From contig NW_027362761.1 of NCBI RefSeq assembly GCF_046119375.1, positions 819,640,001-819,704,000 of the forward strand: a DNA stretch of 64,000 bases. The letters are read 5' to 3'. Source of the DNA: Phyllobates terribilis (taxonomy: Eukaryota). Shown here in pieces: positions 5,161 to 63,702 of this stretch. Within the stretch, counting starts at the first letter, position 1; every line of letters begins with the position of its first letter. Below the pieces are notes generated by a model. It did not search any database. It was not told the origin of the DNA and saw only the letters and a program-made list of their open reading frames with translations. A program made the translations under genes and the position numbers.

Positions 5161-6367
5161 TCCCACTCACACACCACCTCCTCATTTCGCCCCCTATCTG
5201 TTGGTGTACCCCAAGGTTCAGTTCTAGGACCCCTGCTCTTTTCCTTCTACACCTTCGGCCTGGGACAGCTCATAGAGTCTCATGGCTTTCATTATCACCT
5301 CTATGCTGATGACACACAGATCTACCTCTCTGGACCTGATATCTCCTCCCTACTAACAAAAATCCCACAATGTCTGTCCGCTATTTCATCCTTCTTCTCT
5401 GCTAGATTCCTAAAACTTAATATGGAAAAAGCCGAATTCATCATCTTTCCACCATCTCACTCAACCCCCCCACCTGACCCATCTATCAAAGTCAATGGCT
5501 GCTCACTCACCCCAGTCCCACAAGCTCGCTGCCTCGGGGTAACCCTGGACTCTGAGCTCTCCTTCAAACCACATATCCAAGCCCTTTCCACTTCCTGCCG
5601 ACTCCAACTCAAAAATATCTCCCGGATCCGCACATTCCTCACCCACAAATCTGCAAAAACACTAGTACACGCCCTCATCATCTCCCGCCTCGACTACTGC
5701 AACCTCCTGCTCTGTGGCCTCCCTGCCAACACTCTCGCACCCCTCCAATCTATCCTAAACTCTGCTGCCGGACTAATCCACTGGTCACTCCTCTATTCCC
5801 CAGCCTCTCCTCGCTGTCAATCCCTTCACTGGCTCCCCATTGCCCAGAGACTCCAGTTCAAGACCCTAACCTTGGGATACAAAGCCATCCAAACCTGTCT
5901 CCCCCATACATCTGTGACCTAGTTTCCCGGTACTTACCTGCATGCAACCTCCAATCCTCACAAGATCTCCTTCTCTACTCCCCTCTTATCTCCTCCTCCC
6001 ACAATCGCATACAAGATTTCTCCCGTGCATCCCCCCTACTCTGGAAATCTCTACCCCAACATATCAGGCTCTCGCCTTCTGTGGGAACCTTCAAAAGGAA
6101 CCTGAAGACCCACCTCTTCTGACAAGCCAACAACCAGCAGTAACCATTGCTCCACCATACCGCTGCACGACTAGCTGTATCCTCACCTACTGTATCCTCA
6201 CCCATCCCTTGTAGAGTGTGAGCACTCGTGGGCAGGGTCCTCGCTCCTCCTGTACCAGTCACTGACTTCTATTGTTCAAAATTATTGTAATTGTTGGTGC
6301 TATGTATATCCCTTTCACATGTAAAGCGCCATGGAACTAATGGCGCTATAATAATAAATAACAATAA
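5161..6367 (+). mobile_element. 5'-truncated L2 (CR1 group) LINE: reverse transcriptase C-terminal half and 3' tail
   Basis: Reads [13 protein letters not shown]...LYADDTQIY...LDYCN. A 1-bp frameshift lies near 5890 and a stop follows KTHLF. It ends in a gcgccat...atggcgc stem-loop plus an (aat)n tail. Confidence 0.93.
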
Positions 6368-11333: not shown

Positions 11334-12957
11334 CAGTACAGACCAAAAGTTTGGACACACCTTCTCATTTAGATTTTTCTGTATTTTCATGACTATGAAA
11401 ATTGTACATTCACACTGAAGGCATCAAAACTATGAATTAACACATGTGGAATTATATACTTAACAAAAAAGTGTGAATCAACTGAAAATATGTCTTATAT
11501 TCTAGGTACTTCAAAGTAGCCACCTTTTGCTTTGATGACTGCTTTGAACACTCTTGGCATTCTCTTGATGAGCTTCAAGAGGTAGTCACCGGAAATGGTC
11601 TTCCAACAATCTTGAAGGAGTTCCCAGAGATGCTTAGCACTTGTTGGCCCTTTTGCCTTCACTCTGCGGTCCAGCTCACCCCAAACCATCTCGATTGGGT
11701 TCAGGTATGGTGACTGTGGAGGCCAGGTCATCTGGCGTAGCACCCCATCACTCTCCCTCTTGGTCAAATAGCCCTTACACAGCCTGTAGGTGTGTTTGGG
11801 GTCATTGTCCTGTTGAAAAATAAATGATGGTCCAACTAAACGCAATCCCGATGGAATAGCATGCCACTGCAAGATGCTGTGGTAGCCTTGCTGGTTCAGT
11901 ATGCCTTCAATTTTGAATAAATCTCCAACAGTGTCACCAGCAAAGCACCCCCACACCATCACACCTCCTCCTCCATGCTTCACGGTGGGAACCAGGCATG
12001 TAGAGTCCATCCGTTCACCTTTTCTGCGTCGCACAAAGACACGGTGGTTGGAACCAAGGATCTCAAATTTGGACTCATCAGACCAAAGCACAGATTTCCA
12101 CTGGTCTAATGTCCATTCCTTGTGTTCTTTAGCCCAAACAAGTCTCTTCTGCTTGTTGCCTGTCCTTAGCAGTGCTTTCCTAGCAGCTATTTTACCATGA
12201 AGGCCTGCTGCACAAAGTCTCCTCTTAACAGTTGTTGAAGAGATGTGTCTGCTGCTAGAACTCTGTGTGGCATTGACCTGGTCTCTAATCAGAGCTGCTG
12301 TTAACCTGCGATTTCTGAGGCTGGTGACTCGGATAAACTTATCCTCAGAAGCAGAGGTGACTCTTGGTCTTCCTTTCCTGGGGCGGTCCTCATGTGAGCC
12401 AGTTTCTTTGTAGCGTTTGATGGTTTTTGCAACTGCACATGGGGACACTTTCAAAGTTTGCCCATTTTTTCGGACTGACTGACCTTCATTTCTTAAAGTA
12501 ATGATGGCCACTCGATTTTCTTAATTAGCTGCTTTTTTCTTGCCATAATACAAATTCTAACAGTCTATTCAGTAGGACTATCAGCTGTATATCTACCAGA
12601 CTTCTGCACAACACAACTGATGGTCCCAACCCCATTTACAAGGCAAGAAATCCCACTTATTAAACCTGACAGGGCACACCTGTGAAGTGAAAACCATTTC
12701 CGGTGACTACCTCTTGAAGCTCATCAAGAGAATGCCAAGAGTGTGCAAAGCAGTCATCAAAGCAAAAGGTGGCTACTTTGAAGATCCTAGAATATAAAAC
12801 ATATTTTCAGTTGTTTCACACTTTTTTGTTAAGTATATAATTCCACATGTGTTAATTCATAGTTTTGATGCCTTCAGTGTAAATGTACAATTTTCATAGC
12901 CATGAAAATACAGAAAAATCTTTAAATGAAGTGTGTCCAAACTTTTGGTCTGTACTG
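11334..12957 (-). mobile_element. Tc1/mariner DD38E (Intruder-type) copy 1; transposase frameshifted at about codon 9
   Basis: TA|CAGTACAGACC...GGTCTGTACTG|TA with about 266-bp TIRs. The true ATG at 12546 is 35 nt from the GTG that opens the ORF-track frame. WSDESK, QDNDPKH and NPIE give 38 residues between D and E. Confidence 0.95.
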
Positions 12958-13021: not shown

Positions 13022-13348
13022 CAGGGCTGTGGAGTTGGAGTCCATTTTGGTGGAGTCGGTATAAAATGGACAGACTCCAACTCCTAAAATATATAATAAA
13101 TTGGGTACAGCAGTTCAATGCAGTTTGTGGGGAATATTTTTTCATAAGAATTTGGGAAAGTTATGAAATGTCCTATAAATGTCTGTCCTATTCCTGATCT
13201 AAGGGTCTAGACTTTTAGCTGAGATGAATCTGTGCTACAGTAAATTTATCACTTAAACATGAGCCATGTATGAGGGAGTCGGAGTCGTGGAGTCGGTGTC
13301 ATGGAAATTGAGGAGTCGGAGGTTTGGCTTACCGACTCCACAGCCCTG
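13022..13348. mobile_element. hAT-type MITE
   Basis: CAGGGCTGTGGAGT...ACTCCACAGCCCTG TIRs with internal GGAGTC(G) repeats. Confidence 0.75.
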
Positions 13349-19380: not shown

Positions 19381-20535
19381 TTAATCGCTCTCACAAGCAA
19401 CACTGCTTATCTTGGGGAATATAGTACAATTGTATATTGATCCTGTCCGATGAGGGCAAAAAGTGTTGTGCAGAGTCGTCTGTGCAGGTCTATCTGAAGC
19501 TGGGTTACTTCTGTGCGCTGCCATATGTACAGAGCCAATCTCCTATGTAAGCAATGCTCTGATGAAGAAAAGCTCTATATACATACAGCGCCCTATAGAG
19601 AGACAAAACATGGCTTTGGTACACAATGGAAGCGCAATACGACAGTGAGTGGGAGGCCTTAAAGGGGTTGTTCAAAACCATGATATCAATGACCAAGTCA
19701 TAGTATAACATGCAAAAAGGAGAATGAACAGGCTTTTATAGGGCGCTGCTGATCACACTAAAAAGATGGAAAACATAGCAAAGAACCATAAAAAATAGGA
19801 ACTTATAATATATACGTGAGTGGCGATTCTTCATCACTCACAGAGACGCCACAAAATCAGGTTGGCCGGTTAGTTTTTCTTTATCAAGCTATTCTTGGAA
19901 GAGGTGATCCATATCAGATAAGAGAGGGTCCAAAACCCAGACCCCTATGATCACCTGCTCTCAGCTCCGGTGGTGGCCAGATGTACACAGTGAACAGAAC
20001 AGATCCCATATCCAGCACCTGGGATCAGCCACAGCAGTGACCGAAGCGGGGTCTTCTACTCTGCACACATCCAGAGCTGATGGCTAGTGCTCGGTGGGGG
20101 CAAGGTGTGGAACCCCTCAGGTCTGATAATGATGACCTATCCTAAAGGCAGGACATCGATATCGTAGTCCTGAACAACCCCTTATACTTATTGCCGGCAC
20201 AGGGGCCCCCTCTCCTCACTTTACAGTGGAACACTCTGGCATAGCCCCAACCCTAGGCCCCCAGGTAGTGAGGGATCCCCCATGTATGTGCTTGATTCCC
20301 CGCCCCTATGATGAATGACACCGTGCCAAGGCATCCGCAGTGTGGGTGAAGCTATGCAGACCCATGTACCAGCCACCCAGGCGAATACATGGGGTCTCTG
20401 ACAGAGGCAGAGTGCAGCCCCCTCAGTGCAGTGCCAGGACAAAACATGGCGGCCACACACCTCATAAAGCCGAGATCGGACACCTCCGTGACGTCATGTA
20501 ATGTATAGGAAGCAGCCACAGGCTGCAGCACTCAC

Positions 20536-20604
20536 AGTCTCGGCTCCAGACGGCTGCACCCCGGAGCTCTGCTGACCTCCCATCACTCCCCTCAGGAAAT
20601 TCAT
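20536..20604 (-). CDS. uso1: USO1/p115 coding exon 1 (MNFLRGVMGGQQSSGVQPSGAET)
   Basis: The minus strand reads ttcaccATG AAT TTC CTG AGG GGA GTG ATG GGA...GCC GAG ACT|gtgagt. This matches the vertebrate USO1 N-terminus MNFLRGVMGGQ. 69 nt, phase-0 donor. Confidence 0.97.
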
Positions 20605-20859
20605 GGTGAAGGCTGCTGTCAGGTGAGAACGTGCCGGAGGATCGGGAATACAGAGCCCCAGCACTGGACACTCAGGCCCCGGTGCTGTGAAGACGCGGCG
20701 GGGTGAAGGGTGAAGAAGGGGCGGAGGGTGATGTCAGGGTACACGGCTGAGGAGTGATGACGTGGGCATCCAGGAATGAGACCAGGAAGCGGTCGGCGAC
20801 TAGCGCATGCGCGGAGGACGTGGCGGTGACGTGTAGGGTGCAGACTTGTGTCACATGAC

Positions 20860-20912
20860 CTCTCTGTACAACACACGGCTGTGGTCCTGTAGCTCCTCTC
20901 AGTAGTGTCCAG
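20860..20912 (+). other. Putative non-coding first exon of the divergent (plus-strand) transcript; start approximate
   Basis: Lies immediately downstream of the promoter motifs and ends at the strong donor gtccag|gtaggtga. Confidence 0.55.
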
Positions 20913-21110
20913 GTAGGTGAGGGCTGCGGGACAGTCGGTCACATAGCGACATGTGTCGCTCTACGGCAATTCTCAGGAGAGCCCCACTAGTAACTAGTCA
21001 CTGGAATGGAATTACTGCAGTGAGGGGGATAACGAGGCCCAGGTATAACTGAGAATACAGCTGGTTTGTTTTCTTTAGTAGTAATTACGTTATATACTGT
21101 ATATATAGAT

Positions 21111-21536: not shown

Positions 21537-22468
21537 TATTACTGTGTTATTGTCTATAACCCCGCAGCCGTATTACTGTGTTATTGTCTATCTAATCCCG
21601 AAGCCGTATTACTGTTATTGTCTATAACCCCGCAGCCGTATTACTGTGTTATTGTCTATAACCCCGCAGCCGTATTACTGTGTTATTGTCTATCTAACCC
21701 CGCAGCCGTATTACTGTGTTATTGTCTATCTAACCCCGCAGCCGTATTACTGTGTTATTGTCTATCTAACCCCGCAGCCGTATTACTGTGTTATTGTCTA
21801 TCTAACCCCGCAGCCGTATTACTGTGTTATTGTCTATAACCCCGCAGCCGTATTACTGTGTTATTGTCTATCTAACCCCGCAGCCGTATTACTGTGTTAT
21901 TGTCTATCTAACCCCGCAGCCGTATTACTGTGTTATTGTCTATAACCCCGCAGCCGTATTACTGTGTTATTGTCTATAACCCCGCAGCTGTATTACTATG
22001 TTATTGTCTATAACCCCGCAGCCGTATTACTGTGTTATTGTCTATAACCCGCAGCCGTATTACTGTGTTATTGTCTATAACCCCGCAGCCGTATTACTGT
22101 GTTATTGTCTATAACCCCGCAGCCGTATTACTGTGTTATTGTCTATAACCCCGCAGCCGTATTACTGTGTTATTGTCTATAACCCCGCAGCCGTATTACT
22201 GTGTTATGGTCTATAACCCCGCAACCGTATTACTGTGTTGTGGTCTATAACCCGCAGCCGTATTACTGTGTTATGGTCTATAACCCCGCAGCCGTATTAC
22301 TGTGTTATTGTCTATCTAATCCCGCAGCCGTATTACTGTGTTATTGTCTATCTAATCCCGCAGCCGTATTACTGTGTTATTGTCTATCTAATCCCGCAGC
22401 CGTATTACTGTGTTATTGTCTATCTAATCCCGCAGCCATATTACTTTGTTGTCTATCTAATCCCGCAG
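21537..22468 (+). repeat. 33-36 bp minisatellite (about 26 units) made of a repeated 3' splice-site-like sequence
   Basis: Unit ccgtattactgtgttattgtctat(ct)aaccccgcag. The last unit ends at 22468, 26 nt before the ATG at 22495. Confidence 0.95.
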
Positions 22469-22494
22469 AATTCTCATCCAGTGTGAACTGCATA

Positions 22495-23955
22495 ATGGCG
22501 AGGAAAAACCCATTCAACCTTGTTGGCATAGCAGACCTACTAGTTGTAGAGTGCAGTCGCTGGTCCCGAATTCTTCCACAATGTAGCCCGTTACCAGGAG
22601 GCGCTCCCATTAATGCATGGCTCCGTGGCCTGTTGTCTCTACAGATTGGGCGAGAATTACAGCGAGAGGGAATGATTCGTGATGGAGACGTGCGTGAAGG
22701 CATTATGGCCATCAGTGCTGTAGGAGGGGCGCTAAAGATGGACCCCACTAAGTACCTTAACCAAGTGTCAGTGAATGAGCTGATCAGACAGTCAGCAGGT
22801 GCTGCCGCAGTCGCATTAGATGACATAAGTGTCCCCGTGGAGGTAGATATTTGCACCATCACAAATGCCTGGCCTGCAGACTTCCCTGTGCAACCAGTTA
22901 GCAACATCATTTCATTTGACCCTGCCCACTGGGCTGCTTGGTTACTGACTCTTGTGCCTGGAAGTACTGGATTAGTGGCCACATGTCAAGCCTCTAATGC
23001 TCCAGCCGGAATTAAACCAGTGCCTGTCAACGGGGAACTTCATCCTTGGGCAGTGGCAATGTACATTGATGTTAACATCGTGACTGGGGCAGCTATGAAA
23101 CAACGCGTTGAGGATGACTTGGCCATCTTGGAATTGTTATTGATCATTGCTCTCTTTTCCCGTCGATCGGCTGCACGTCATGGTCAGATCATCAACTTAA
23201 TAGTGTTAGGGATTACAATTGTGACCAGTGGTGGGCATATCACAAATGGACAAATTCGGAAGATTATTAAACAATCTAATGTAGATACAGTTGACTTCAC
23301 CCGAGAGATGGTCCTGAAGGGATGGGACTTTTTCTCCATGCATTGTTTGCATGGGATGACAACAGGAGATGACTTCAGACAATTGTTCCAACTGCTTGAA
23401 GCTACCGCCCGACCAATTTCCCTGTGTCTAGCATCTTTGTGCCAACAAACTGAGCTCAAGATGTTAACTCCGATTGTGACAACTGTTCGAGCGATCAAAG
23501 ATTTCCAAGACTTCCCATGGCAAGAACTCTTTGATTTGATAGTTCTTCAAACAGGGACTGATGAATTGGGACCTATTCAGCAGTATGGGGCATATATAGC
23601 CACCCCTCCATCAGCACCCCAGCCAGTCAGCACAGCTGTTACTGATGCTCCTCCTGGAGGTCACTGGGCAGGGTGGGAATTGATTCAGAGAGAGCGTCCC
23701 CAAGGCCACATGAAGATCTCCAGCTTTGTTAATAGCCTATATGCTGCCATTCAACTAACAATCCAGGTTGGTGGTAACATGGCTTTGAGACAGTATAAAG
23801 TTTTGCAGAACCATACTGTGCCACTTAAGGACATCATTGATAACTGGATTGTGCGGTATGTACAAGCTCGAGCAGTTGCTCGAGGAGTTGCTGCTGTCAG
23901 CCCTGCAGTCGCTGCTAGTGCTGGACTCCAAGCCATACGAGCTTTGCACTTGTAG
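22495..23955 (+). CDS. Intact 486-aa ORF, endogenous viral element resembling a chuvirus-like (Jingchuvirales/Mononegavirales-type) nucleoprotein
   Basis: Non-repetitive, stop-free and intronless, with Kozak cataATGG. Motifs LASLCQQTELKMLTPIVTTVRAIKDFQDFPWQEL (23428-23530) and SFVNSLYAAIQLTIQVGGNMALRQYK (23722-23799) resemble, from memory, the QQxxxxxLTxxxxIxRAIxxYPDFPW and SxxxNLxxxAxxLxxxxGxxxLxxY blocks of chuvirus N. No cellular protein is recognised. The family assignment is by motif recognition only. Confidence 0.72.
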   Translation: MARKNPFNLVGIADLLVVECSRWSRILPQCSPLPGGAPINAWLRGLLSLQIGRELQREGMIRDGDVREGIMAISAVGGALKMDPTKYLNQVSVNELIRQSAGAAAVALDDISVPVEVDICTITNAWPADFPVQPVSNIISFDPAHWAAWLLTLVPGSTGLVATCQASNAPAGIKPVPVNGELHPWAVAMYIDVNIVTGAAMKQRVEDDLAILELLLIIALFSRRSAARHGQIINLIVLGITIVTSGGHITNGQIRKIIKQSNVDTVDFTREMVLKGWDFFSMHCLHGMTTGDDFRQLFQLLEATARPISLCLASLCQQTELKMLTPIVTTVRAIKDFQDFPWQELFDLIVLQTGTDELGPIQQYGAYIATPPSAPQPVSTAVTDAPPGGHWAGWELIQRERPQGHMKISSFVNSLYAAIQLTIQVGGNMALRQYKVLQNHTVPLKDIIDNWIVRYVQARAVARGVAAVSPAVAASAGLQAIRALHL

Positions 23956-24021
23956 TGATGCAGTTACTCCTCATGCGGACTAGTTGGCATCCTGCAAGGA
24001 AATCTGTAGTCTGTGTTGGTA

Positions 24022-24206
24022 ATTAAAGAGTGTACCCAAGTGTTATCAATAGTGCCTTCTAAAGTACATAAGAGGCAGTATCTACTCACCGATGTATTTG
24101 TAAGTTATGTCATGCCCTTCTTCTCTTGTTCAAATGCATGTATTAGAAATCATACTACACCACTGCACAATTTCTGTTTTTAAGAATTTAAAAAAATAAA
24201 AAAAAA
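24022..24206 (+). terminator. Candidate poly(A) signals of the viral-like gene
   Basis: ATTAAA at 24022-24027 and AATAAA at 24195-24200 within an A-rich tract (24190-24206). Confidence 0.45.
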
Positions 24207-27815: not shown

Positions 27816-28633
27816 CACATACTCCAGTCCCAGTGTATCCAATGTGATGTATATACTCCAGCCCCAGTGTATCCTGTGTGATGGATATACTCCAGTCCCA
27901 GTGTATCCATTGCGATGTATATACTCCAGCCCCAGTGTATCCTGTGTGATGGATATACTCCAGTCCCAGTGTATCCTGTGTGATGGATATACTCCAGTCC
28001 CAGTGTATCCTGTGTGATGGATATACTCCAGTCCCAGTGTATCCTGTGTGATGGATATACTCCAGTCCCAGTGTATCCTGTGTGATGGATATACTCCAGT
28101 CCCAGTGTATCCTGTGTGATGGATATACTCCAGTCCCAGTGTATCCTGTGTGATGGATATACTCCAGTCCCAGTGTATCCTGTGTGATGGATATACTCCA
28201 GTCCCAGTGTATCCTGTGTGATGGATATACTCCAGTCCCAGTGTAATCAATGTGATTTATATACTCCAGTCCCATTGTATCCAATGTGATTTATATACTC
28301 CAGTCCCATTGTATCCAATGTGATGTATATACTCCAGTCCCAGTGTATCCATTGCGATGTATATACTCCAGTCCCAGTGTATCCATTGCGATGTATATAC
28401 TCCAGCCCCAGCGCATCCTGTGTGATGTATATACTCCAGCCCCAGTGTATCCTGTGTGATGGATATACTCCAGCCCCAGTGTATCCTGTGTGATGGATAT
28501 ACTCCAGCCCCAGTGTATCCTGTGTGATGGATATACTCCAGGCCCAGTGTATCCTGTGTGATGGATATACTCCAGCGCCAGTGTATCCTGTGTGATGGAT
28601 ATACTCCAGCCCCAGTGTATCCTGTGTAATGTA

Positions 28634-30263
28634 CAGTACAGACAAAAAGTTTGGAAACACCTTCTCATTTAAAGATTTTTCTGTATTTTCATGACTATGA
28701 AAATTGTACATTCACACTGAAGGCATCAAAACTATGAATTAACACATGTGGAATTATATACTTAACAAAAAAGTGTGAAACAACTGAAAATATGTCTTAT
28801 ATTCTAGGTTCTTCAAAGTAGCCACCTTTTGCTTTGATGACTGCTTTGCACACTCTTGGCATTCTCTTGATGAGCTTCAAGAGGTAGTCATCGGAAATGG
28901 TCTTCCAACAATCTTGAAGGAGTTCCCAGAGATGCTTAGCACTTGTTAGCCCTTTTGCCTTCACTCTGCGGTCCAGCTCACCCCAAACCATCTCGATTGG
29001 GTTCAGGTCTGGTGACTGTGGAGGCCAGGTCATCTGGCGTAGCACCCCATCACTCTCCTTCTTGGTCAAATAGCCCTTACACAGCCTGGAGGTGTGTTTG
29101 GGGTCATTGTCCTTTTGAAAAATAAATGATGGTCCATCTAAACGCAAATCGGATAGAATAGCATGCCGCTGCATGATGCTGTGGTAGCCATGCTGGTTCA
29201 GTATGCCTTCAATTTTGAATAAATCCCCAACAGTGTCAACAGCAAAGCACCCCCACACCATCACACCTCCTCCTCCATGCTTCACGGTGGGAACCAGGCA
29301 TGTAGAGTCCATCCGTTCACCTTTTCTGCGTCGCACAAAGACACGGTGGTTGGAACCAAAGATCTCAAATTTGGACTCATCAGACCAAAGCACAGATTTC
29401 CACTGGTCTAATGTCCATTCCTTGTGTTCTTTAGCCCAAACAAGTCTCTTCTGCTTGTTGCCTGTCATTAGCAGTGGTTTCCTAGCAGCTATTTTGCCAT
29501 GAAGGCCTGCTGCACAAAGTCTCCTCTTAACAGTTGTTGAATAGATGTGTCTGCTGCTAGAACTCTGTGTGGCATTGACCTGGTCTCTAATCTGAGCTGC
29601 TGTTAACCTGCGATTTCTGAGGCTGATGACTCGGATAAACTTCTCCTCAGAAGCAGAGGTGACTCTTGGTCTTCCTTTCCTGGGGCGGTCCTCATGTGAG
29701 CCAGTTTCTTTGTAGCGCTTGATGGTTTTTGCAACTGTACTTGGGGACACTTTCAAAGTTTTCCCAATTTTTCAGACTGACTGACCTTCATTTCTTAAAG
29801 TAATGATGGCCACTTGTTTTTTTTTACTTAGCTGCTTTTTTCTTGCCATAATACAAATTCTAACAGTCTATTCAGTAGGACTATCAGCTGGGTATCCACC
29901 AGACTTCTGCACAACACAACTGATGGTCCCAACCCCATTTGTAAGGCAAGAAATCCCACTTATTAAACCTGACAGGGCACAGCTGTGAAGTGAAAACCAT
30001 TTCTGGTGACTACCTCTTGAAGCTCATCAAGAGAATGCCAAGACTGTGCAAAGCAGTCATCAAAGCAAAAGGTGGCTACTTTGAAGAACCTAGAATATGA
30101 GACATATTTTCAGTTGTTTCACACTTTTTTGTTAAGTATATAATTCCACATGTGTTAATTCATAGTTTTGATGCCTTCAGTGTGAATGTACAATTTTCAA
30201 AGTCATGAAAATACTGAAAAATCTTTAAATGAGAAGGTGTGTCCAAACTTTTGGTCTGTACTG
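28634..30263 (-). mobile_element. Tc1/mariner DD38E copy 2; nonsense codon at position 26
   Basis: TA-flanked with the same TIRs as copy 1. ATG at 29849, TGA at 29772-29774, remainder open (28797-29756). Confidence 0.95.
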
Positions 30264-30331: not shown

Positions 30332-33300
30332 TGTAATGCACACGCCCGGACTGACTGGCGTGTGCGTGTATATGTAGTGATTCCAATGGACCGTACCGGA
30401 GATTGAATGCCTGGAGGGGCGTAACTAAGTATCCACCCGATTTGACCAAGGTCGCACGACGGCATACGACGCCAGTGCACCAAGGAGGGACCGAGCAGAG
30501 GGACCAGGTGCTACTCCAGGTCAGTCCCTGGACACGGCTGTTGACCCACACCGGGGAATACAGGAACAGGCAGGTTAGGCTGGCACACAGACTGGTGGGT
30601 ACATGCAGACACGGCAGGTATGCAGACGGGTGGATGCTGGCAAGCACGACTGTTATGCAAACAGGGAGGTACTGGCAGGTATGCAGGCAGGTTGATGTTG
30701 GTAAGCATTACTGGTATGCAGGCAGGGAGGTACTGGCAGGTACGACAGGTTGGAGCACAGAGTGGATAGGACACAGTACAGACTGGGACTCAGGGAGAGA
30801 ACCGCAGATGCGGTGGACAAACACCAGAGGGAGGCCGTCCGGAGCGGTGAGCAAGAGCAGAGCAAGACGAGGCCACCTGGAGCAGCGAGCAAAGGGTCAG
30901 AGCAGAGCGAGACTGCCGGAGCGGCGAGCAAAGGGTCAGAGCAGAGCGAGACTGCCGGAGCGGCGAGCAAAGGGTCAGAGCAGAGCGAGACTGCCGGAGC
31001 GGCGAGCAAACGGTCAGAGCAGAGCGAGACTGCCGGAGCGGCGAGCAAAGGGTCAGAGCAGAGCGAGACTGCCGGAGCGGCGAGCAAAGGGTCAGAGCAG
31101 AGCGAGACTGCCGGAGCGGCGAGCAAAGGGTCAGAGCAGAGCGAGACTGCCGGAGCGGCGAGCAAAGGGTCAGAGCAGAGCGAGACTGCCGGAGCGGCGA
31201 GCAAAGGGTCAGAGCAGAGCGAGACTGCCGGAGCGGCGAGCAAAGGGTCAGAGCAGAGCGAGACTGCCGGAGCGGCGAGCAAAGGGTCAGAGCAGAGCGA
31301 GACTGCCGGAGCGGCGAGCAAAGGGTCAGAGCAGAGCGAGACTGCCGGAGCGGCGAGCAAAGGGTCAGAGCAGAGCGAGACTGCCGGGGCGGCGAGCAAA
31401 GGGTCAGAGCAGAGCGAGACTGCCGGGGCGGCGAGCAAAGGGTCAGAGCAGAGCGAGACTGCCGGGGCGGCGAGCAAAGGGTCAGAGCAGAGCGAGACTG
31501 CCGGGGCGGCGAGCAAAGGGTCAGAGCAGAGCGAGACTGCCGGGGCGGCGAGCAAAGGGTCAGAGCAGAGCGAGACTGCCGGGGCGGCGAGCAAAGGGTC
31601 AGAGCAGAGCGAGACTGCCGGGGCGGCGAGCAAAGGGTCAGAGCAGAGCGAGACTGCCGGGGCGGCGAGCAAAGGGTCAGAGCAGAGCGAGACTGCCGGG
31701 GCGGCGAGCAAAGGGTCAGAGCAGAGCGAGACTGCCGGGGCGGCGAGCAAAGGGTCAGAGCAGAGCGAGACTGCCGGGGCGGCGAGCAAAGGGTCAGAGC
31801 AGAGCGAGACTGCCGGGGCGGCGAGCAAAGGGTCAGAGCAGAGCGAGACTGCCGGGGCGGCGAGCAAAGGGTCAGAGCAGAGCGAGACTGCCGGGGCGGC
31901 GAGCAAAGGGTCAGAGCAGAGCGAGACTGCCGGGGCGGCGAGCAAAGGGTCAGAGCAGAGCGAGACTGCCGGGGCGGCGAGCAAAGGGTCAGAGCAGAGC
32001 GAGACTGCCGGGGCGGCGAGCAAAGGGTCAGAGCAGAGCGAGACTGCCGGGGCGGCGAGCAAAGGGTCAGAGCAGAGCGAGACTGCCGGGGCGGCGAGCA
32101 AAGGGTCAGAGCAGAGCGAGACTGCCGGGGCGGCGAGCAAAGGGTCAGAGCAGAGCGAGACTGCCGGGGCGGCGAGCAAAGGGTCAGAGCAGAGCGAGAC
32201 TGCCGGGGCGGCGAGCAAAGGGTCAGAGCAGAGCGAGACTGCCGGGGCGGCGAGCAAAGGGTCAGAGCAGAGCGAGACTGCCGGGGCGGCGAGCAAAGGG
32301 TCAGAGCAGAGCGAGACTGCCGGGGCGGCGAGCAAAGGGTCAGAGCAGAGCGAGACTGCCGGGGCGGCGAGCAAAGGGTCAGAGCAGAGCGAGACTGCCG
32401 GGGCGGCGAGCAAAGGGTCAGAGCAGAGCGAGACTGCCGGGGCGGCGAGCAAAGGGTCAGAGCAGAGCGAGACTGCCGGAGCGGCGAGCAAAGGGTCAGA
32501 GCAGAGCGAGACTGCCGGGGCGGCGAGCAAAGGGTCAGAGCAGAGCGAGACTGCCGGGGCGGCGAGCAAAGGGTCAGAGCAGAGCGAGACTGCCGGGGCG
32601 GCGAGCAAAGGGTCAGAGCAGAGCGAGACTGCCGGGGCGGCGAGCAAAGGGTCAGAGCAGAGCGAGACTGCCGGGGCGGCGAGCAAAGGGTCAGAGCAGA
32701 GCGAGACTGCCGGGGCGGCGAGCAAAGGGTCAGAGCAGAGCGAGACTGCCGGGGCGGCGAGCAAAGGGTCAGAGCAGAGCGAGACTGCCGGGGCGGCGAG
32801 CAAAGGGTCAGAGCAGAGCGAGACTGCCGGGGCGGCGAGCAAAGGGTCAGAGCAGAGCGAGACTGCCGGAGCGGCGAGCAAAGGGTCAGAGCAGAGCGAG
32901 ACTGCCGGAGCGGCGAGCAAAGGGTCAGAGCAGAGCGAGACCGCCTGGAGCGGCGAGCAAAGGCAGAGCAGGCAAGAACCGCTGGAGCGGTGAGCAAGGC
33001 AGAGCAGAGGGGACAGGGCTCTGTTAACACGGAGCAGACAGGAAGGGAAAGGCAGAACCAGATACCCACAGGGTACTTGCAGTGAAGTAGCGAGTGGACC
33101 ACAAACTCACAAACGGAAGTACAGTGACAACGAGCAAGAGTTAGGTACGAGTTCAGACTCTACAGAAAAAGGAAAGATATGGGCGTAGAGAGAAATGGGA
33201 AACAGGCTGGAAGATGGTTAGGGCAGGAACAGACACTGGGAAAGGACACAGACAACAGATCTAGGTATGCGGCCCCTAGAGGGCAGAAGGAACAGGCTAA

Positions 33301-33721: not shown

Positions 33722-34779
33722 TCCAGTCCCAGTGTATCCTGTGTGATGTATATACTCCAGCCGCAGTGTATCCTGTGTGATGGATATACTCCAGCCGCAG
33801 TGTATCCTGTGTGATGGATATACTCCAGCCGCAGTGTATCCTGTGTGATGGATATACTCCAGCCGCAGTGTATCCTGTGTGATGTATATACTCCAGTCCC
33901 AGTGTGTCCTGGGTGATGTATATACTCCAGTCCCAGTGTGTCCTGTGTCATGTATATACTCCAGTCCCAGTGTATCCTGTGTGATGGATATACTCCAGTC
34001 CCAGTGTATCCATTGTGATTTATGTACATCAGTCACTGCTTGAGTTCTATAAATGTAATGTGAGCAGTGATGAAATTCCCACTGTGAGGAGACCTGCAGT
34101 GTAATATACATCTGTGTTCGGTAAGACTTACTGCTGTGAGTTCTTTACAAAACTTATCATTGCAAATAGTCGCCTGCGCTCTAGACCAACGCAAATATGG
34201 AAAATCAGTTACGAGTAGCAACATCATCCATAATACCTAACATGACAGGCGCGCCAAAGAGAACCACTTCCAGCTATCACATTCGGGGTGAGTTAAATAA
34301 ATGTTTGACCAAATATAGCAGGGTAATTTTCAAGTTGATAATTTTGTACGGCCCCTGAAGGATGGAAAAAATATCCAAATGACCCTTGGCAAAAAATAGT
34401 TTCCCTACCACTGCATTAGACAGTGAAAAACAGATCACGCTAGGATACTCGTATAACATCCGTGTGCTGTCCATTTTTTTCCAGACTCATTGACTTGAGT
34501 TGGCAATTTTGATCTGCAAATTGGATCAAAATTGGATATGTAACTTTTTAGGGGAGACCAATGCTTCCAAAACAAAAAATGGACATGTGTGCAGCTCCAT
34601 AGACTATAATGGGTTTGTGAAAAAAGGATTGAATAAGTACAACAACACAAGTATAAATTAGGCCTTACTGTGAGTATGCTGTATTATTTCTTTCTTAGTA
34701 GCTAAGGACCCAGCCATCTTTTTGGCTCAATGAGCAGTTTGTACCCTGTTTAGTACTGACCTAAACAATTATTATGGTA

Positions 34780-35766: not shown

Positions 35767-37358
<1,592 letters not shown>

Positions 37359-52277: not shown

Positions 52278-53519
52278 CAGTACAGACCAAAAGTTTGGAC
52301 ACACCTTCTCATTTAAAGATTTTTCTGTATTTTCCTGACTATGAAAATTGTACATTCACACTGAAGGCATCAAAACTATGAATTAACACATGTGGAATTA
52401 TATACTTAACAAAAAAGTGTGAAACAACTGAAAATATCTCTTATATTCTAGGTTCTTCAAAGTAGCCACCTTTTGCTTTGATGACTGCTTTGCACACAAT
52501 TGACATTCTCTTGATGAGCTTCAAGAGGTAGTCACCGGAAATGGTCTTCCAACAATCTTGAAGGAATTCCAAGAGATGCTTAGCACTTGTTGGCCCTTTT
52601 GCCTTCACTCTGTGGTCCAGCTCACCCCAAACCATCTCGATTGGGTTCAGGTCTGGTGACTGTGGAGGCCAGGTCATCTGGCGTAGCACCCCATCACTCT
52701 CCGTCTTGGTCAAATAGCCCTTACACAGCCTAGAGGTGTGTTTGGGGTCATTGTTCTGTTGAAAAATAAATGATGGTCCAACTAAACGCAAACCGGATGG
52801 AATAGCATGCCGCTGCAAGAAGCTGTGGTAGCCATGCTGGTTCACTATGCCTTCAATTTTGAATAAATCCCCAACAGTGTCACCAGCAAAGCACCCCCAC
52901 ACCATCACACCTCCTCCTCCATGCTTCACGGTGGGAACCAGGCATGTAGAGTCCATCTGTTTACCTTTTCTGCGTCGCACAAAGACACGGTGGTTGGAAC
53001 CAAAGATCTCAAATTTGGACTCATCAGACCAAAGCACAGATTTCCACTGGTCTAATGTCCATTCCTTGTGTTCTTTAGCCCAAACAAGTCTCTTCTGCTT
53101 GTTGCCTGTCTTCAGCAGTGGTTTCCTAGCAGCTATTTTACCATGAAGGCCTGCTGCACAAAGTCTCCTCTTAACAGTTGTTGAAGAGATGTGTCTGCTG
53201 CTAGAACTGTGTGGCATTGACCTGGTCTCTAATCTGAGCTGTGAAGTGAAAACCATTTCCGGTGACTACCTCTTGAAGCTCATCAAGAGAATGCCAAGAG
53301 TGTGCAAAGCAGTCATCAAAGCAAAAGGTGGCTACTTTGAAGAACCTAGAATATAAGACATATTTTCAGTGGTTTCACACTTTTTTGTTAAGTATATAAT
53401 TCCACATGTGTTAATTCATAGTTTTGATGCCTTCAGTGTGAATGTACAATTTTCATAGTCATGAAAATACAGAAAAATCTTTAAATGAGAAGGTGTGTCC
53501 AAACTTTTGGTCTGTATTG
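52278..53519 (-). mobile_element. Tc1/mariner DD38E copy 3, internally deleted, inserted in the right palindrome arm
   Basis: Same TIRs, TA-flanked. A junction at about 53238 (ctgagctg|tgaagtg) removes the start codon and DNA-binding domain. Confidence 0.93.
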
Positions 53520-54129: not shown

Positions 54130-57100
54130 AGGGGGAGGACACGTTGGTCCACTTCCTGAATCAGGTAATCATGTTTTCCTACTAGGTTCCTGCGTTGCTT
54201 CAGTATTTTTGCTTTGGCTTTACAGTCTGGACCTATGATAAGCTCGCTGTTGCTTTGCTCTATTTAAACCTTATTGAGATCTGAGATGCATTTAGTAATG
54301 ACTACTTCCCTTGTCGCACATGCGCTATACTAGGACACTGTAGTCCTCTTATAAGTATATCTCTTTATTGCCTGGATTCTACCACATGAGGTGTGTTATC
54401 CTGTAAACATATTCATGTATTATATATGCTAGCAGTGGACCTTTTAGTGTTTTCCATTCCCCCATTTTTTGGAGGTTTTCCCTTGTCTAATTTTAATGTA
54501 TCTTTTATTTTTGAACTGAATAAATATTGGTTTCATTTTTTCATATCTTGTCAGAATCTCTTCTTGTCTTGCGGTTATGTGCCGCGTCAGACCTCTTTTG
54601 TGTTATTATAGTTTGGAAGCTGTCTGACCTCATGGTTTTGGACTACATTTGAATTAATAATGCAGGACAATGCCAGACTTCATGTGACTGGAGTGTCAGC
54701 AGATCCTACAAGATGAAGGCATTGAAGCTATGGACTGGCCCGCCTGTTCCCCAGACCTGAATCCGATTGAGCACATCTGGGACATCATGTCTCGCTCCAT
54801 CCACCAACGTCATGTTGCACCACAGACTGTACAGGAGTTGGCTGATGCTTTAGTCTGGGAGGAGATCCCACAGGAGACCATCCGCAACCTCATCAGGAGC
54901 ATGCCCAGGCATTGTAGGGAGGTCATACAGGCACGTGGAGGCCACACACAATACTGAGCCTCATTTTGACTTGTTTTAAGGACATTACATGAAAGTTGGA
55001 TCAGCCTGTAGTGTTTTTCCACTTTAATTTTGGGGGTGACTCCAAATCCAGGCCTCCATTGGTTAATAAATTTGATTTCCATTGATGATTTTTGTGTGAT
55101 TTTGTTGTCAGCACATTCAACTTTGTACAGAACAAAGTATTCAATGAGAATATTTCATTCATTCAGATCTAGGATGTGTTATTTGAGTGTTCCCTTTATT
55201 TTTTTGAGCAGTGTATTTATTTAAAGTGCAGGCAATTCAAAAAGTAAAGATATTTCAGTCATCTGACCTTCATTAGTATAACAGATTGCACAAGACAGTG
55301 TCAATTTATTACGAGTGCCAAGTTTTTTTCAATTGTTTTCAGGTGGGCACATGAACCCCGGCCATTGGTGCAGAAGGCAGGAAGGCACGTTGAAAGTGAG
55401 GATTTAGCACACGCAGGAAACTCAGGGCCAGTAGAATAGGTGAAGAGGAGCAAAGTAAGGCTGAATGCAACATAAACCCAGACCAGCAGGTCTGCAGTTT
55501 TAGTGCATTTCTGCAGTGGAAACGCATCAAAAGCGCATGTAAATCGGCACATGTCTGTATCAATAAAATTTTGTCACAGCTAAATATCAGGAAGTATCAA
55601 TAACAAAACAGCTTTATTTAAAGTGTGACATAAGAAGAAACAAAAAAAAACGCATGTAAAGACGTGCAATAAAGACATAGGTGCAGAAAACCTGCAACAT
55701 CATAAACTCAATGTGGAAAAGTGGCCTAAAGAGGGGTTTTTTCGCCACTCAAGGAGGGTAATAAAGAGTGAGCACACACTGGCGTAATGGAGACCACAGC
55801 CCGTCACACAAACGATGCGCCTCATCCAGTGACCGAGGACATGGCTATTGGTCAGCGTCTGGCCTGTCCACCCTACACCCAGCTCTACACCTTCACTGTG
55901 GCCCATCCACACTACACCCAACTCTACACCTTCACTACGGCCTGTCCACACTACACCCAGTCCACACTACACCCAGCAATACACCTTCACTACGGCCTGT
56001 CCACACTACACCCAGCTCTACACCTTCACTACGGCCCGTCCACACTACACCCAGTCCACACTACACCCAGCAATACACCTTCACTACGGCCTGTCCACAC
56101 TACACCCAGCTCTACACCTTCACTACGAGCTGTCCACACTACACCCAGCTCTACATCTTCAGTACGGCCCGTCCACACTACACCCAGCAATACACCTTCA
56201 TTACAGCCCGTCCACACTACACCCAGCTCTACACCTTCACTGTGGCCCGTCCACACTACACCCAGCTCTACATCTTCAGTACGGCCCGTCCACACTACAC
56301 CCAGCAATACACCTTCATTACAGCCCGTCCACACTACACCCAGCTCTACACCTTCACTGTGGCCCGTCCACACTACACCCAGCTCTACACCTTCACTGTG
56401 GCCTGTCCACACTACACCCAGCTCTACACCTTCACTGTGGCCCGTCCACACTACACCCAGCAATACACCTTCACTACGGCCCGTCAACACTACACCCAGC
56501 TCTACACCTTCACTGTGGCCTGTCCACATTACACCCAACCCTACACCTTCACTGGGGCCTGTCCACACTACACCCAGCTCTACACCTTCACTACGGCCCC
56601 TCCACACTACACCCAGCTCTACACCTTCACTGTGGCCCGTCCACACTACACCCAACTCTACACCTTCACTGGGGCCTGTCCACACTACACCCAGCTCTAC
56701 ACCTTCACTACGAGCTGTCCACACTACACCCAGCTCTACATCTTCACTACGGCCCGTCCACACTACACCCAGCAATACACCTTCACTGTGGCCCGTCCAC
56801 GCTACACCCAGCTCTACACCTTCACTGTGGCCCGTCCACGCTACACCCAGCTCTACACCTTCACTGTGGCCCGTCCACGCTACACCCAGCTCTACACCTT
56901 CACTGTGGCCCGTCCACGCTACACCCAGCTCTACACCTTCACTGTGGCCCGTCCACGCTACACCCAGCTCTACACCTTCACTGTGGCCCGTCCACGCTAC
57001 ACCCAGCTCTACACCTTCACTGTGGCCCGTCCACGCTACACCCAGCTCTACACCTTTACTGTGGCCCGTCCACACTACACCCAGCAATACACCTTCACTA

Positions 57101-58181
57101 CGGCCCGTCAACACTACACCCAGCTCTACACCTTCACTGTGGCCTGTCCACATTACACCCAACTCTACACCTTCACTGGGGCCTGTCCACACTACACCCA
57201 GCTCTACACCTTCACTACGGCCCGTCCTCACTACACCCAGCTCTACACCTTCACTGTGGCCTGTCCACACTACACCCAGCTCTACACCTTCACTACGGCC
57301 CCTCCACACTACACCCAGCTCTACACCTTCACTGTGGCCCGTCCACACTACACCCAACTCTACACCTTCACTGGGGCCTGTCCACACTACACCCAGCTCT
57401 ACACCTTCACTACGAGCTGTCCACACTACACCCAGCTCTACATCTTCACTACGGCCCGTCCACACTACACCCAGCAATACACCTTCACTGTGGCCCGTCC
57501 ACGCTACACCCAGCTCTACACCTTCACTGTGGCCCGTCCACGCTACACCCAGCTCTACACCTTCACTGTGGCCCGTCCACGCTACACCCAGCTCTACACC
57601 TTCACTGTGGCCCGTCCACGCTACACCCAGCTCTACACCTTCACTGTGGCCCGTCCACGCTACACCCAGCTCTACACCTTCACTGTGGCCCGTCCACGCT
57701 ACACCCAGCTCTACACCTTCACTGTGGCCCGTCCACGCTACACCCAGCTCTACACCTTCACTGTGGCCCATCCACACTACACCCCGCTCTACACCTTCAC
57801 TGTGGCCCGTCCACACTACACCCCGCTCTACACCTTCACTGTGGCCCGTCCACACTACACCCCGCTCTACACTTTCACTGTGGCCCATCCACACTACACC
57901 CCGCTCTACACCTTCACTGTGGCCCGTCCACACTACACCCAGCAATACACCTTCACTGTGGCCCGTCCACACTACACCCCGCTCTACACCTTCACTGTGG
58001 CCCGTCCACACTACACCCCGCTCTACACCTTCACTGTGGCCCGTCCACACTACACCCCGCTCTACACCTTCACTGTGGCCCGTCCACACTACACCCAGCT
58101 CTACACCTTCACTGTGGCCCGTCCACACTACACCCCGCTCTACACCTTCACTGTGGCCCGTCCACACTACACCCCGCTCTA

Positions 58182-59751: not shown

Positions 59752-60349
59752 TACACCTTCACTGTGGCCCGTCCACACTACACCCCGCTCTACACCTTCA
59801 CTGTGGCCCGTCCACACTACACCCAGCTCTACTCCTTCACTGTGGCCCGTCCACACTACACCCCGCTCTACACCTTCACTGTGGCCTGTCCACGCTACAC
59901 CCCGCTCTACACCTTCACTGTGGCCTGTCCACGCTACACCCAGCTCTACACCTTCACTGTGGCCCGTCCACACTACACCCAACTCTACACCTTCACTGTG
60001 GCCCGTCCACTCTACACCCAACTCTACACCTTCACTGTGGACCATCCACACTACACCCCGCTCTACACCTTCACTGTTGCCCGTCCACACTACACCCCGC
60101 TCTACACCTTCACTGTGGCCCGTCCACACTACACCCCGCTCTACACCTTCACTGTGGCCCGTCCACGCTACACCCAGCTCTACTCCTTCACTGTGGCCCG
60201 TCCACACTACACCCCGCTCTACACCTTCACTGTGGCCTGTCTACGCTACACCCAGCTCTACACCTTCACTGTGGCCCGTCCACGATGCACCCAGCTCTAC
60301 ATCTTCACTGTTTCCATTGTTCATTGTTTGTGGTCAATAAAGTTTTCAC

Positions 60350-63150: not shown

Positions 63151-63702
63151 TTTGTTCTCCTTGTCTACATAGATATGAGGGGAGCTGCAGGGTGTGTCCT
63201 TGGCCGTCTTTTTATTTCCACTGCTCCTTGCTGTGGAATAACTGGGGGCTCCAGACCCCTTGCCATCAGGACAAGGGACAATGTTGAGAGCAGAATTCTG
63301 TCTGTCTCCAAAAACTGTAAGAATAAAATAAAAAAATAATTTTACTCACTTGGTTTAAGGTGACGGCACACGCTGAGGCACAGAGGAGAATGATGCGCAA
63401 ATCGAGCGGACCCCTGACATACGTTGAGCTCCTTAAGCGGTGTCCTGTCACTCAGTGAACTCAGCACAGGTCAGAGACCCGCTCGCTGCAGCGCATCATT
63501 CTTCTCTGCTCCTCAGCCTGTGCAGTCGCCTCAAGCCAGGTGAGTATAATGATTTCTTTTTATTTCATACTTTTACACTTGTTGGAGACATTGGGAGCAG
63601 ACTACTACTCTAAACACTGTCCCTTTCTCTCACTGATCGCAGCGCAAGCAGGGGACAATGATGAGCGATTCCTTCAGCACCAAATGCTTGGGAACAGCGC
63701 TA

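What the first reader, a model, noticed from the sequence alone, without database searches (positions are those of the whole stretch)
22495..23955. Intact chuvirus-like nucleoprotein gene: candidate domesticated RNA-virus element in an amphibian genome
Seen in sequence: 486 uninterrupted non-repetitive codons in a region where most surrounding elements carry frameshifts, stops or insertions; no introns; no transposon motifs. Established: negative-strand RNA viruses have no DNA stage, yet their N genes can be endogenised (bornavirus EBLN, filovirus NP-like), and chuviruses (Piscichuvirus) infect fish and reptiles. Inference: the QQ...LT...RAI..F.DFPW block and the downstream NSL...GxxxLRQY block place this protein with Jingchuvirales nucleoproteins, making it both a molecular fossil of an amphibian chu-like virus and a possible co-opted gene, such as a dominant-negative restriction factor or RNA-binding protein. 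I do not know of a description of this locus.
Basis: partly seen in the sequence, partly recalled or inferred. Interest (0 to 1): 0.95.

Follow-up and report, generated by a model that had tools for sequence, protein, structure and literature searches.

The report
Chu-like virus nucleoprotein gene in frogs
A poison-frog chromosome carries an intact gene copied long ago from the nucleoprotein of a chu-like (Jingchuvirales) RNA virus, shared at the same spot by four frog species and kept readable by selection for most of about 40 million years; the kind of element is known, this locus apparently is not.

Summary
Window 22495-23955 (+) is an uninterrupted, non-repetitive 486-codon ORF with a strong start context.

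The viral reading also holds:
- A confident AlphaFold model (pLDDT 85) matches almost only Jingchuvirales nucleoproteins in BFVD.
- Sequence relatives lie upstream of L (after the putative G) on three complete-looking 11-12 kb mononegavirus-type RNA contigs, one from lungfish RNA-seq. Their polymerase is nearest a classified jingchuvirus.
- Only the N gene is present in the window, as expected for an mRNA-derived endogenous viral element.

The copy is orthologous, head-to-head with uso1, in Dendrobates tinctorius (intact), Ranitomeya imitator and Anomaloglossus baeobatrachus (one in-frame stop each, no frameshifts). The insertion therefore predates the poison-frog radiation (about 36-43 Ma).

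Whole-tree dN/dS is 0.44 (0.35-0.54). About 34 stops are expected under neutrality and 2 are seen, so protein-level selection acted for much of its history. The recent branches are relaxed (0.58-0.78, intervals reach 1), so present function in this species is unproven.

Chuvirus N-like EVEs in amphibians are already published as a class. This is a new, unusually well-preserved member from a divergent lineage. An antiviral decoy role is inference only.

The parts
22495..23955 (+). Intact ORF (486 aa plus stop) derived from a jingchuvirus-like nucleoprotein (N) gene: the endogenous viral element proper.
   Evidence: ORF. Confident model, pLDDT 85.3, pTM 0.84. BFVD top hits are Jingchuvirales N. 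tblastn of N from viral-type contigs L006 and L007 hits only 22513-23862 (34% and 27% identity, E 8e-71 and 5e-45). Keeps 33 of 34 residues invariant among 7 distant relatives.
22451..22494 (+). Short conserved 5' leader. It includes a candidate splice acceptor (AG at 22480-22481) and the conserved start context.
   Evidence: Four-species alignment A4. The exon boundary of the annotated R. imitator model maps here. Its use as an acceptor in this species is inferred, not shown.
23956..24206 (+). 3' untranslated tail. About 190 nt after the stop are alignable in all four species. It has an AATTAAA-type signal at 24021-24027 and an A-rich tract at 24190-24206 (containing AATAAA) shared with D. 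tinctorius. This is a possible remnant of the viral mRNA 3' end and poly(A).
   Evidence: Alignment A5 and blastn. The poly(A)-remnant reading is inference. No target-site duplication was sought.
21537..22450 (.). 34-bp tandem satellite (26 copies) abutting the 5' end of the element. It lies inside the presumed intron or upstream region.
   Evidence: The same array is present in D. tinctorius and has grown to tens of kb in R. imitator. Only about two degenerate units are present in Anomaloglossus.
20640..20960 (.). Highly conserved CpG-rich uso1 promoter region and candidate bidirectional promoter for the element. A plus-strand CAG|GT donor (exon would end at 20912) is conserved in the three dendrobatids.
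   Evidence: Alignment A3. The annotated R. imitator gene range starts about 250 bp from the uso1 5' end. Promoter sharing and the non-coding first exon are inferred.
20512..20604 (-). Coding part of uso1 exon 1 (host neighbour, head-to-head with the element, about 1.9 kb from its ATG).
   Evidence: The window's own translation matches the annotated Uso1 CDS starts in L002 (97%) and L005 (86%). Those neighbours carry Pfam Uso1_p115_head.

Best explanation
The ORF is a non-retroviral endogenous viral element: a DNA copy of the nucleoprotein mRNA of an extinct or unsampled jingchuvirus-like (chu-like) negative-strand RNA virus. It entered the germ line, presumably through host retrotransposon reverse transcriptase (inferred), just upstream of uso1 in the common ancestor of Dendrobatidae and Aromobatidae. 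It has since been kept as a protein-coding host gene for much of its history, which is shown by selection on the reading frame and on amino-acid changes. It is probably transcribed from, or next to, the uso1 CpG-island promoter through a short non-coding first exon spliced to an acceptor 13 nt before the ATG (inferred from the R. imitator annotation and conserved splice signals). The product keeps the fold and the family-invariant residues of a viral N protein. The most likely activity is that of an N-like RNA- or N-binding protein that interferes with nucleocapsid assembly of related viruses, by analogy with bornavirus-like N elements. That step is inference only. Constraint looks weaker on the recent branches, and the gene has acquired one stop in each of two lineages, so it may be on its way to loss in parts of the clade.
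For: Intact 486-aa ORF. Fold: model pLDDT 85.3; 24 BFVD hits at E<=0.001, nearly all N of Chuviridae and other Jingchuvirales, for example Wenling crustacean virus 14 (4e-8), Genoa virus, Wenling fish chuvirus-like virus (1.2e-7); the best PDB neighbours, though weak, are paramyxo- and pneumovirus N. Relatives from the profile search (71 hits) sit after a large first ORF (putative G) and upstream of an L with Mononeg_RNA_pol, mRNAcap and methyltransferase domains, in the order G, (extra ORF), N, small ORF, L, on contigs of 12.1, 10.9 and 11.9 kb. One contig comes from African lungfish skin RNA-seq. The nearest named relative of that L is Wenzhou crab virus 3, Jingchuvirales. Only N matches the window. 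Orthology: the same position and orientation next to uso1 in three other species. Selection: pairwise dN/dS 0.37-0.68; whole tree 0.44 [0.35-0.54], deep branches 0.19 and 0.33. 3.9% of single-base changes would give a stop, so about 34 stops are expected over a tree of dS length 0.60; 2 are seen and there are no frameshifts. dS (0.18-0.20) agrees with flank divergence. 33 of 34 family-invariant residues are retained. Start context conserved. NCBI annotates a protein-coding gene here in three species.
Against: R. imitator and A. baeobatrachus each carry one in-frame stop. Terminal-branch dN/dS is 0.58-0.78 with bootstrap intervals reaching or passing 1. No expression, translation or activity data could be consulted. 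No sequence-only method names the family: Pfam has no match and PDB has none by sequence, so naming rests on fold and genome linkage. Target-site duplications were not sought, so the integration mechanism is inferred. The family within Jingchuvirales is unresolved: L identity to the nearest named virus is only 25%.
Confidence: 0.75

Rival explanations
1. A neutral fossil. The element is an old EVE that is simply decaying, and the open frame in this species and in D. tinctorius is luck.
For: One premature stop in each of two of the four species. Terminal-branch dN/dS intervals include 1. Most published chuvirus N-like EVE orthogroups showed no significant purifying selection (PMC11521997).
Against: Whole-tree dN/dS is 0.44 with an upper bound of 0.54, and the deep branches are 0.19-0.33. 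About 34 stops are expected and 2 observed, with no frameshift in about 1.46 kb across four lineages. Even for the window's own tip (dS 0.072), about 4 stops are expected, P(0) about 0.02. The halves of the gene show equally low dN/dS in comparisons with the stop-bearing species, so those stops look recent, polymorphic or erroneous.
Confidence: 0.15
2. The locus acts as RNA rather than protein, for example as a source of small or antisense RNAs against related viruses, and the ORF is incidental.
For: Small-RNA-based use of EVEs is well documented in arthropods (abstracts listed). No protein evidence is available here.
Against: Selection is specifically on amino-acid-changing sites relative to synonymous ones, and on the frame. 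Family-invariant residues are retained. The start context is conserved.
Confidence: 0.05
3. Not viral. It is a fast-evolving host or transposon gene that viruses captured, or an assembly contaminant.
For: No Pfam family and no sequence hit in PDB. Database names are all 'uncharacterized protein'.
Against: The vertebrate distribution is patchy and the looked-up copies lie at unrelated loci: next to CTP synthase in a loach, and in Engystomops with no annotated neighbour and no similarity to the uso1 locus; further homologues occur in snakes and a hake. Relatives are embedded in three full viral-type genomes with L. The fold matches viral N only. There is host flank on both sides and synteny in four independent assemblies.
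Confidence: 0.02

Closest known systems
Chuvirus (Jingchuvirales) nucleoprotein-like EVEs of vertebrates, as catalogued in PMC11521997 (92 N-like EVEs in teleosts, amphibians, squamates and marsupials) and PMC11089739 (9 chuvirus EVEs in Amphibia, for example Nanorana parkeri)
   Same: Same kind of element: a single N gene of a chu-like virus in a vertebrate chromosome, apparently mRNA-derived. Some catalogued examples also have ORFs above 400 aa.
   Different: I found no mention of Ranitomeya, Dendrobates or Engystomops in the held supplementary text of those papers, but those files are incomplete. The published chuvirus orthogroups were in fish and snakes, and only a chuvirus L (Poecilia) showed significant purifying selection. 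Here an amphibian N orthogroup of four species has dN/dS 0.44. The sequence is far from the named query viruses: 14% identity to Wenling fish chuvirus-like virus N in the structural alignment.
Endogenous bornavirus-like nucleoprotein elements (EBLN)
   Same: An N gene of a negative-strand RNA virus, endogenised as a single gene. Some copies keep long ORFs for tens of millions of years under purifying selection, and one inhibits the cognate virus (as summarised in PMC11521997).
   Different: A different virus order (Jingchuvirales, not Bornaviridae/Mononegavirales) and a different host class. No expression or activity data exist for the frog gene.
Nucleoproteins of exogenous jingchuviruses (Chuviridae such as Mivirus, Chuvivirus, Piscichuvirus; Natareviridae)
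   Same: The predicted fold matches them first. Close sequence relatives sit upstream of L, after the putative G, in a G-N-L gene order. From my own knowledge, this order is a rotation of the L-G-N order typical of chuviruses.
   Different: It is a host chromosomal gene without G or L. It shares only 10-17% identity with named N proteins over the significant structural alignments. Its closest exogenous-looking relatives are unnamed contigs, one from lungfish RNA-seq (33-37% identity by different alignments).

Membership tests
Jingchuvirales nucleoprotein (N) | Detectable homology to N proteins of classified jingchuviruses | tested here: met
   Foldseek against BFVD gave 24 hits at E<=0.001. 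Ranks 1-31 are almost all N of Chuviridae or chu-related viruses, with taxonomy checked for two. By sequence alone no named viral protein was recovered.
Jingchuvirales nucleoprotein (N) | Relatives occupy the N gene position of a genome that also encodes a mononegavirus-type L and a glycoprotein | tested here: met
   L006 has ORFs of 631, 305, 509 (N-like), 85 and 2188 aa (L). L007 has 605, 463 (N-like), 86 and 2159 aa (L). L009 has a G with Pfam Monjiviricetes_fusion, then 426 (N-like), 156 and 2257 aa (L). The first ORFs of L006 and L007 have no Pfam hit, so they are called G by position only.
Jingchuvirales nucleoprotein (N) | The linked polymerase groups with Jingchuvirales rather than with Mononegavirales families | tested here: inconclusive
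   The only named hit of the L006 polymerase is Wenzhou crab virus 3 (25% identity, E 3e-58), in Jingchuvirales, Natareviridae. No phylogeny was made and the search tool is word-limited, so the order-level call is likely but the family is open.
Jingchuvirales nucleoprotein (N) | Two-lobed helical N fold shared with mononegavirus nucleoproteins | tested here: inconclusive
   The model is mostly helical. The best PDB neighbours are morbillivirus, Nipah and metapneumovirus N, but only at E 0.09-0.6 and TM 0.28-0.44. Lobes were not inspected directly.
Non-retroviral endogenous viral element (mRNA-derived) | Lies in host chromosomal DNA, between host sequences, at an orthologous site in related species | tested here: met
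   It lies head-to-head with uso1 in the window and in D. tinctorius, R. imitator and A. baeobatrachus.
Non-retroviral endogenous viral element (mRNA-derived) | A single viral gene, not a genome | tested here: met
   Of all ORFs of L006 and L007, only N matches the window.
Non-retroviral endogenous viral element (mRNA-derived) | Poly(A) remnant and target-site duplication from retrotransposon-mediated integration | tested here: inconclusive
   An A-rich tract at 24190-24206, about 250 nt after the stop, is shared with D. tinctorius. The 5' flank is occupied by a satellite. Duplications were not sought.
Co-opted (domesticated) EVE gene | Reading frame kept longer than neutrality allows | tested here: met
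   About 34 stops are expected over the four-species tree and 2 are seen, with 0 frameshifts.
Co-opted (domesticated) EVE gene | dN/dS significantly below 1 | tested here: met
   Whole tree 0.44 [0.35-0.54]. Pairwise values are 0.37-0.68. It is not significant on the single terminal branches.
Co-opted (domesticated) EVE gene | Transcribed and translated in the host | not testable with these tools
   Only indirect evidence: NCBI gene models exist in three species and one is spliced.
Co-opted (domesticated) EVE gene | Demonstrated host function | not testable with these tools
   No data.

The most novel reading that the evidence does not exclude
Poison frogs have kept a chu-like virus nucleoprotein as a working protein-coding gene for roughly 40 million years, expressed from the uso1 promoter region. 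This would be the first amphibian non-retroviral EVE with evidence of protein-level selection. It descends from an unclassified vertebrate-associated jingchuvirus lineage whose living relatives infect lungfish and other lower vertebrates. Its role would be protection against such viruses, or a new cellular RNA-binding function.
Probability: 0.3. Interest if true: 0.7.

Novelty: new member of a known kind. Interest (0 to 1): 0.5.

Why it matters
It dates chu-like virus infection of frogs to before the split of Dendrobatidae and Aromobatidae (about 36-43 Ma, PMC2653552). It adds an amphibian case to the short list of RNA-virus nucleoprotein genes that hosts have kept under selection. It also links that fossil to a divergent, still unnamed group of jingchuvirus-like genomes visible in public RNA-seq data from lungfish and other samples. 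The pattern of two intact orthologues and two with a single, apparently recent stop gives a natural comparison for studying gain and loss of such genes by descriptive means.

Tried and rejected
- Pfam on the ORF and on ten relatives found nothing meaningful.
- PDB by sequence, with the single protein and with a 38-sequence profile, found nothing.
- AlphaFold with only six sequences gave pLDDT 34 and was unusable. Only the 38-sequence alignment gave a usable model.
- The word-indexed protein search with the deep alignment added nothing new.
- Database names for 20 relatives were all 'uncharacterized' or absent.
- Orthology with the Engystomops copy was rejected: no uso1 and no nucleotide similarity within 10 kb.
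- The 584-codon frame from 22201 was rejected as the gene, because the extra codons are satellite read-through.
- The other large ORFs in the window were rejected as genes; they are satellites.
- Pfam on the first ORFs of L006 and L007 gave no glycoprotein family.
- Target-site duplications and g3bp2 were not examined.

Two slips to own up to.
1. These letters were never sent to a tool. The uso1 call in this report rests only.
2. While reasoning I worked out roughly where the two premature stops lie and which codon might be involved. Those places are not given here.

Full report
**1. Observation**

The window has an ATG at 22495 followed by 486 sense codons and a stop ending at 23955.

The mechanical ORF list extends the frame to 22201. 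Those extra codons are read-through of a 34-bp tandem array (21537-22450, 26 copies).

The start codon has A at -3 and G at +4, and this context is identical in four frog species.

The other very long 'ORFs' in the window are open in several frames on both strands. They coincide with 39- and 46-bp GC-rich satellites. The ORFs of 270-343 aa are Tc1/mariner transposases. This ORF is therefore the one long, non-repetitive, non-transposon reading frame in the window and is far beyond chance. Pfam finds nothing in it.

**2. What it is**

Sequence searches first found only 'uncharacterized' proteins:
- Dendrobates tinctorius: 78% identity, full length.
- Ranitomeya imitator and Anomaloglossus baeobatrachus: shorter annotated products.
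- A loach, and one RNA-seq contig: 38% identity.

An exhaustive profile search gave 71 relatives. They include predicted proteins of Engystomops pustulosus, Thamnophis sirtalis, Naja naja and Merluccius merluccius.

Three relatives lie on contigs of 12.1, 10.9 and 11.9 kb with the same layout: a large first ORF, the N-like ORF, a small ORF, and a 2,160-2,260-aa polymerase (the 12.1-kb contig has an extra 305-aa ORF after the first). The polymerase carries the Mononeg_RNA_pol and Mononeg_mRNAcap domains; in L006 and L007 also the methyltransferase domains. In the third contig the first ORF carries the Monjiviricetes fusion-glycoprotein domain. One of these contigs comes from African lungfish skin RNA-seq.

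The polymerase of that contig has a single named relative, Wenzhou crab virus 3 (25% identity). NCBI taxonomy places it in Jingchuvirales, Natareviridae.

With a 38-sequence alignment, AlphaFold gave a confident model (pLDDT 85.3, pTM 0.84). Foldseek against predicted viral structures returned 24 hits at E<=0.001. Ranks 1-31 are almost exclusively nucleoproteins of Chuviridae and chu-related viruses, followed at much weaker scores by paramyxo- and rhabdovirus N. In the PDB the best but non-significant neighbours are morbillivirus, Nipah and metapneumovirus N.

Of all ORFs of the two closest viral-type contigs, only N matches the window.

The ORF is therefore a single-gene endogenous copy of a jingchuvirus-like nucleoprotein. 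It retains 33 of the 34 residues that are invariant among seven distant full-length relatives.

**3. Age and orthology**

In D. tinctorius, R. imitator and A. baeobatrachus the homologue lies on the opposite strand just upstream of a gene with Uso1 domains.

The window has the same arrangement. uso1 exon 1 is at 20604-20512 on the minus strand, confirmed by matching the window's own translation to the annotated CDS starts. A highly conserved CpG-rich promoter follows, and the flanks are alignable on both sides.

The insertion therefore predates the split of Dendrobatidae and Aromobatidae. [quoted passage not shown]

The copies in a loach (next to CTP synthase) and in Engystomops (no uso1, no nucleotide similarity) are separate insertions. 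Engystomops is the nearest relative (41% identity), which hints at a frog-associated viral lineage.

**4. State of the copies**

| Species | In-frame stops | Frameshifts | Notes |
|---|---|---|---|
| Window species | 0 | 0 | intact |
| D. tinctorius | 0 | 0 | a few in-frame length differences |
| R. imitator | 1 | 0 | |
| A. baeobatrachus | 1 | 0 | |

The two stops are at different but nearby codons, and each arose independently.

**5. Selection**

Nei-Gojobori estimates, skipping gapped and stop codons:
- Pairwise dN/dS is 0.37-0.68. Bootstrap intervals are below 1 for five of six pairs.
- On the four-taxon tree, overall dN/dS is 0.44 (0.35-0.54).
- The deep branches are 0.19 and 0.33.
- The three dendrobatid tips are 0.58-0.78, with intervals that reach or pass 1. 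The window's tip is 0.63 (0.37-1.31).

Synonymous divergence (0.18-0.20 between the window species and the other two dendrobatids) agrees with the divergence of the 3' flank.

In the window ORF, 3.9% of possible single-base changes create a stop. Over a tree of synonymous length 0.60, about 34 stops would be expected under neutrality, against 2 observed. For the window's own tip, about 4 are expected against 0, P about 0.02.

The two halves of the gene have similarly low dN/dS even in comparisons with the stop-bearing species. Their stops therefore look recent, polymorphic or erroneous.

Conclusion: protein-level purifying selection acted for much of the element's history. Current constraint is weaker or uncertain.

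**6. Likely gene anatomy and mechanism (inferred)**

The annotated R. imitator gene range begins about 250 bp from the uso1 5' end. It contains a coding exon derived from a repeat that is absent from this position in the window; a related copy lies at 5328-5444 on the minus strand. It then enters the viral exon at a boundary that maps 13 nt before the ATG. An AG is conserved there in all four species.

A plus-strand CAG|GT donor next to the uso1 promoter is conserved in the three dendrobatids.

I therefore propose transcription from the shared CpG promoter and a short non-coding exon. An intron containing the satellite follows, then one coding exon with a 3' tail of about 250 nt ending in an A-rich tract.

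The integration route (reverse transcription of viral mRNA by host retroelements) and the activity (an N-like protein that binds RNA or viral N and disturbs nucleocapsid assembly) follow established knowledge of such elements, as summarised in PMC11089739 and PMC11521997. They were not tested.

**7. Comparison with what is known**

Chuvirus N-like EVEs in amphibians are published as a class:
- 92 N-like EVEs across teleosts, amphibians, squamates and marsupials; chuvirus orthogroups only in fish and snakes; purifying selection only for a chuvirus L (PMC11521997).
- Nine chuvirus EVEs in Amphibia (PMC11089739).

I found no mention of dendrobatid loci in the text or in the held supplementary files, but those files are incomplete.

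This is a new member of a known kind. It is notable for a four-species amphibian orthogroup, an intact 486-aa ORF, dN/dS of 0.44, and great distance from named chuviruses.

**8. Slips**

See Tried and rejected.

**Verdict**

Viral (Jingchuvirales N) origin is strongly supported. Domestication is supported historically but unproven at present. Interest is moderate.

Noticed in passing
window 21537-22450; L004 about 10.5-38 kb; L002 about 7.7-9.9 kb; L005 just upstream of 10001: The 34-bp satellite abutting the element's 5' end is shared by the three dendrobatids and has expanded to tens of kb in R. imitator. Anomaloglossus has only about two degenerate units, so the array seems to have grown from sequence next to the insertion.
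   Followed up: partly
L006 (Logan SRR6291330_333, 12,116 nt), L007 (SRR2029383_663, 10,918 nt), L009/L010 (SRR14381421 and SRR14381420, about 11.9 kb): These are complete-looking jingchuvirus-type genomes, with the N-like ORF upstream of L and after the putative G, in public RNA-seq assemblies. L006 is from African lungfish (Protopterus dolloi) skin. Their polymerases share only 25% identity with the nearest named virus, so they may be an undescribed vertebrate-associated lineage.
   Followed up: partly
L004 39162-39278 and 62482-62640; window 5328-5444 (-): The N-terminal extension of the annotated R. imitator protein is encoded by an exon that is a copy of a dispersed repeat. The window has a 51%-identical copy far from the element, on the other side of uso1 exon 1.
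   Followed up: partly
window 30885-33009, 55860-58183, 59752-60311, 61150-63151: Large GC-rich, strand-skewed tandem arrays (39-, 39-, 39- and 46-bp units, 14-60 copies, 90-99% matches) create spurious multi-frame ORFs of 640-870 aa. The 30.9-33.0 kb array is flanked on both sides by a different 34-bp array (28000-28631 and 33722-34034).
   Followed up: partly
window 11498-12511, 28800-29756, 35975-37003, 52444-53256, 58362-59375 (all -): Five Tc1/mariner-type transposase ORFs (HTH_Tnp_Tc3_2 plus DDE_3; two also have the Sleeping Beauty HTH) of 271-343 aa, all on the minus strand.
   Followed up: partly
window 20640-20960: The uso1 promoter is very highly conserved across four poison-frog species, including a GCGCATGCGC palindrome and TGACGTG motifs.
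   Followed up: no
L002 between 11437 and 11669; L004 between 56081 and 56378: D. tinctorius and R. imitator each have an insertion of about 230-300 bp immediately after the element's stop codon that the window and Anomaloglossus lack. The R. imitator one resembles a repeat also found at window 13022-13343.
   Followed up: no
L003 (Paramisgurnus dabryanus), L008 (Engystomops pustulosus); proteins P0008, P0011, P0018: Independent intact or long N-like ORFs of the same family occur in a loach (455 aa), a túngara frog (501 aa), a garter snake (457 aa), a cobra and a hake. Long-ORF retention is therefore recurrent for this viral lineage.
   Followed up: partly
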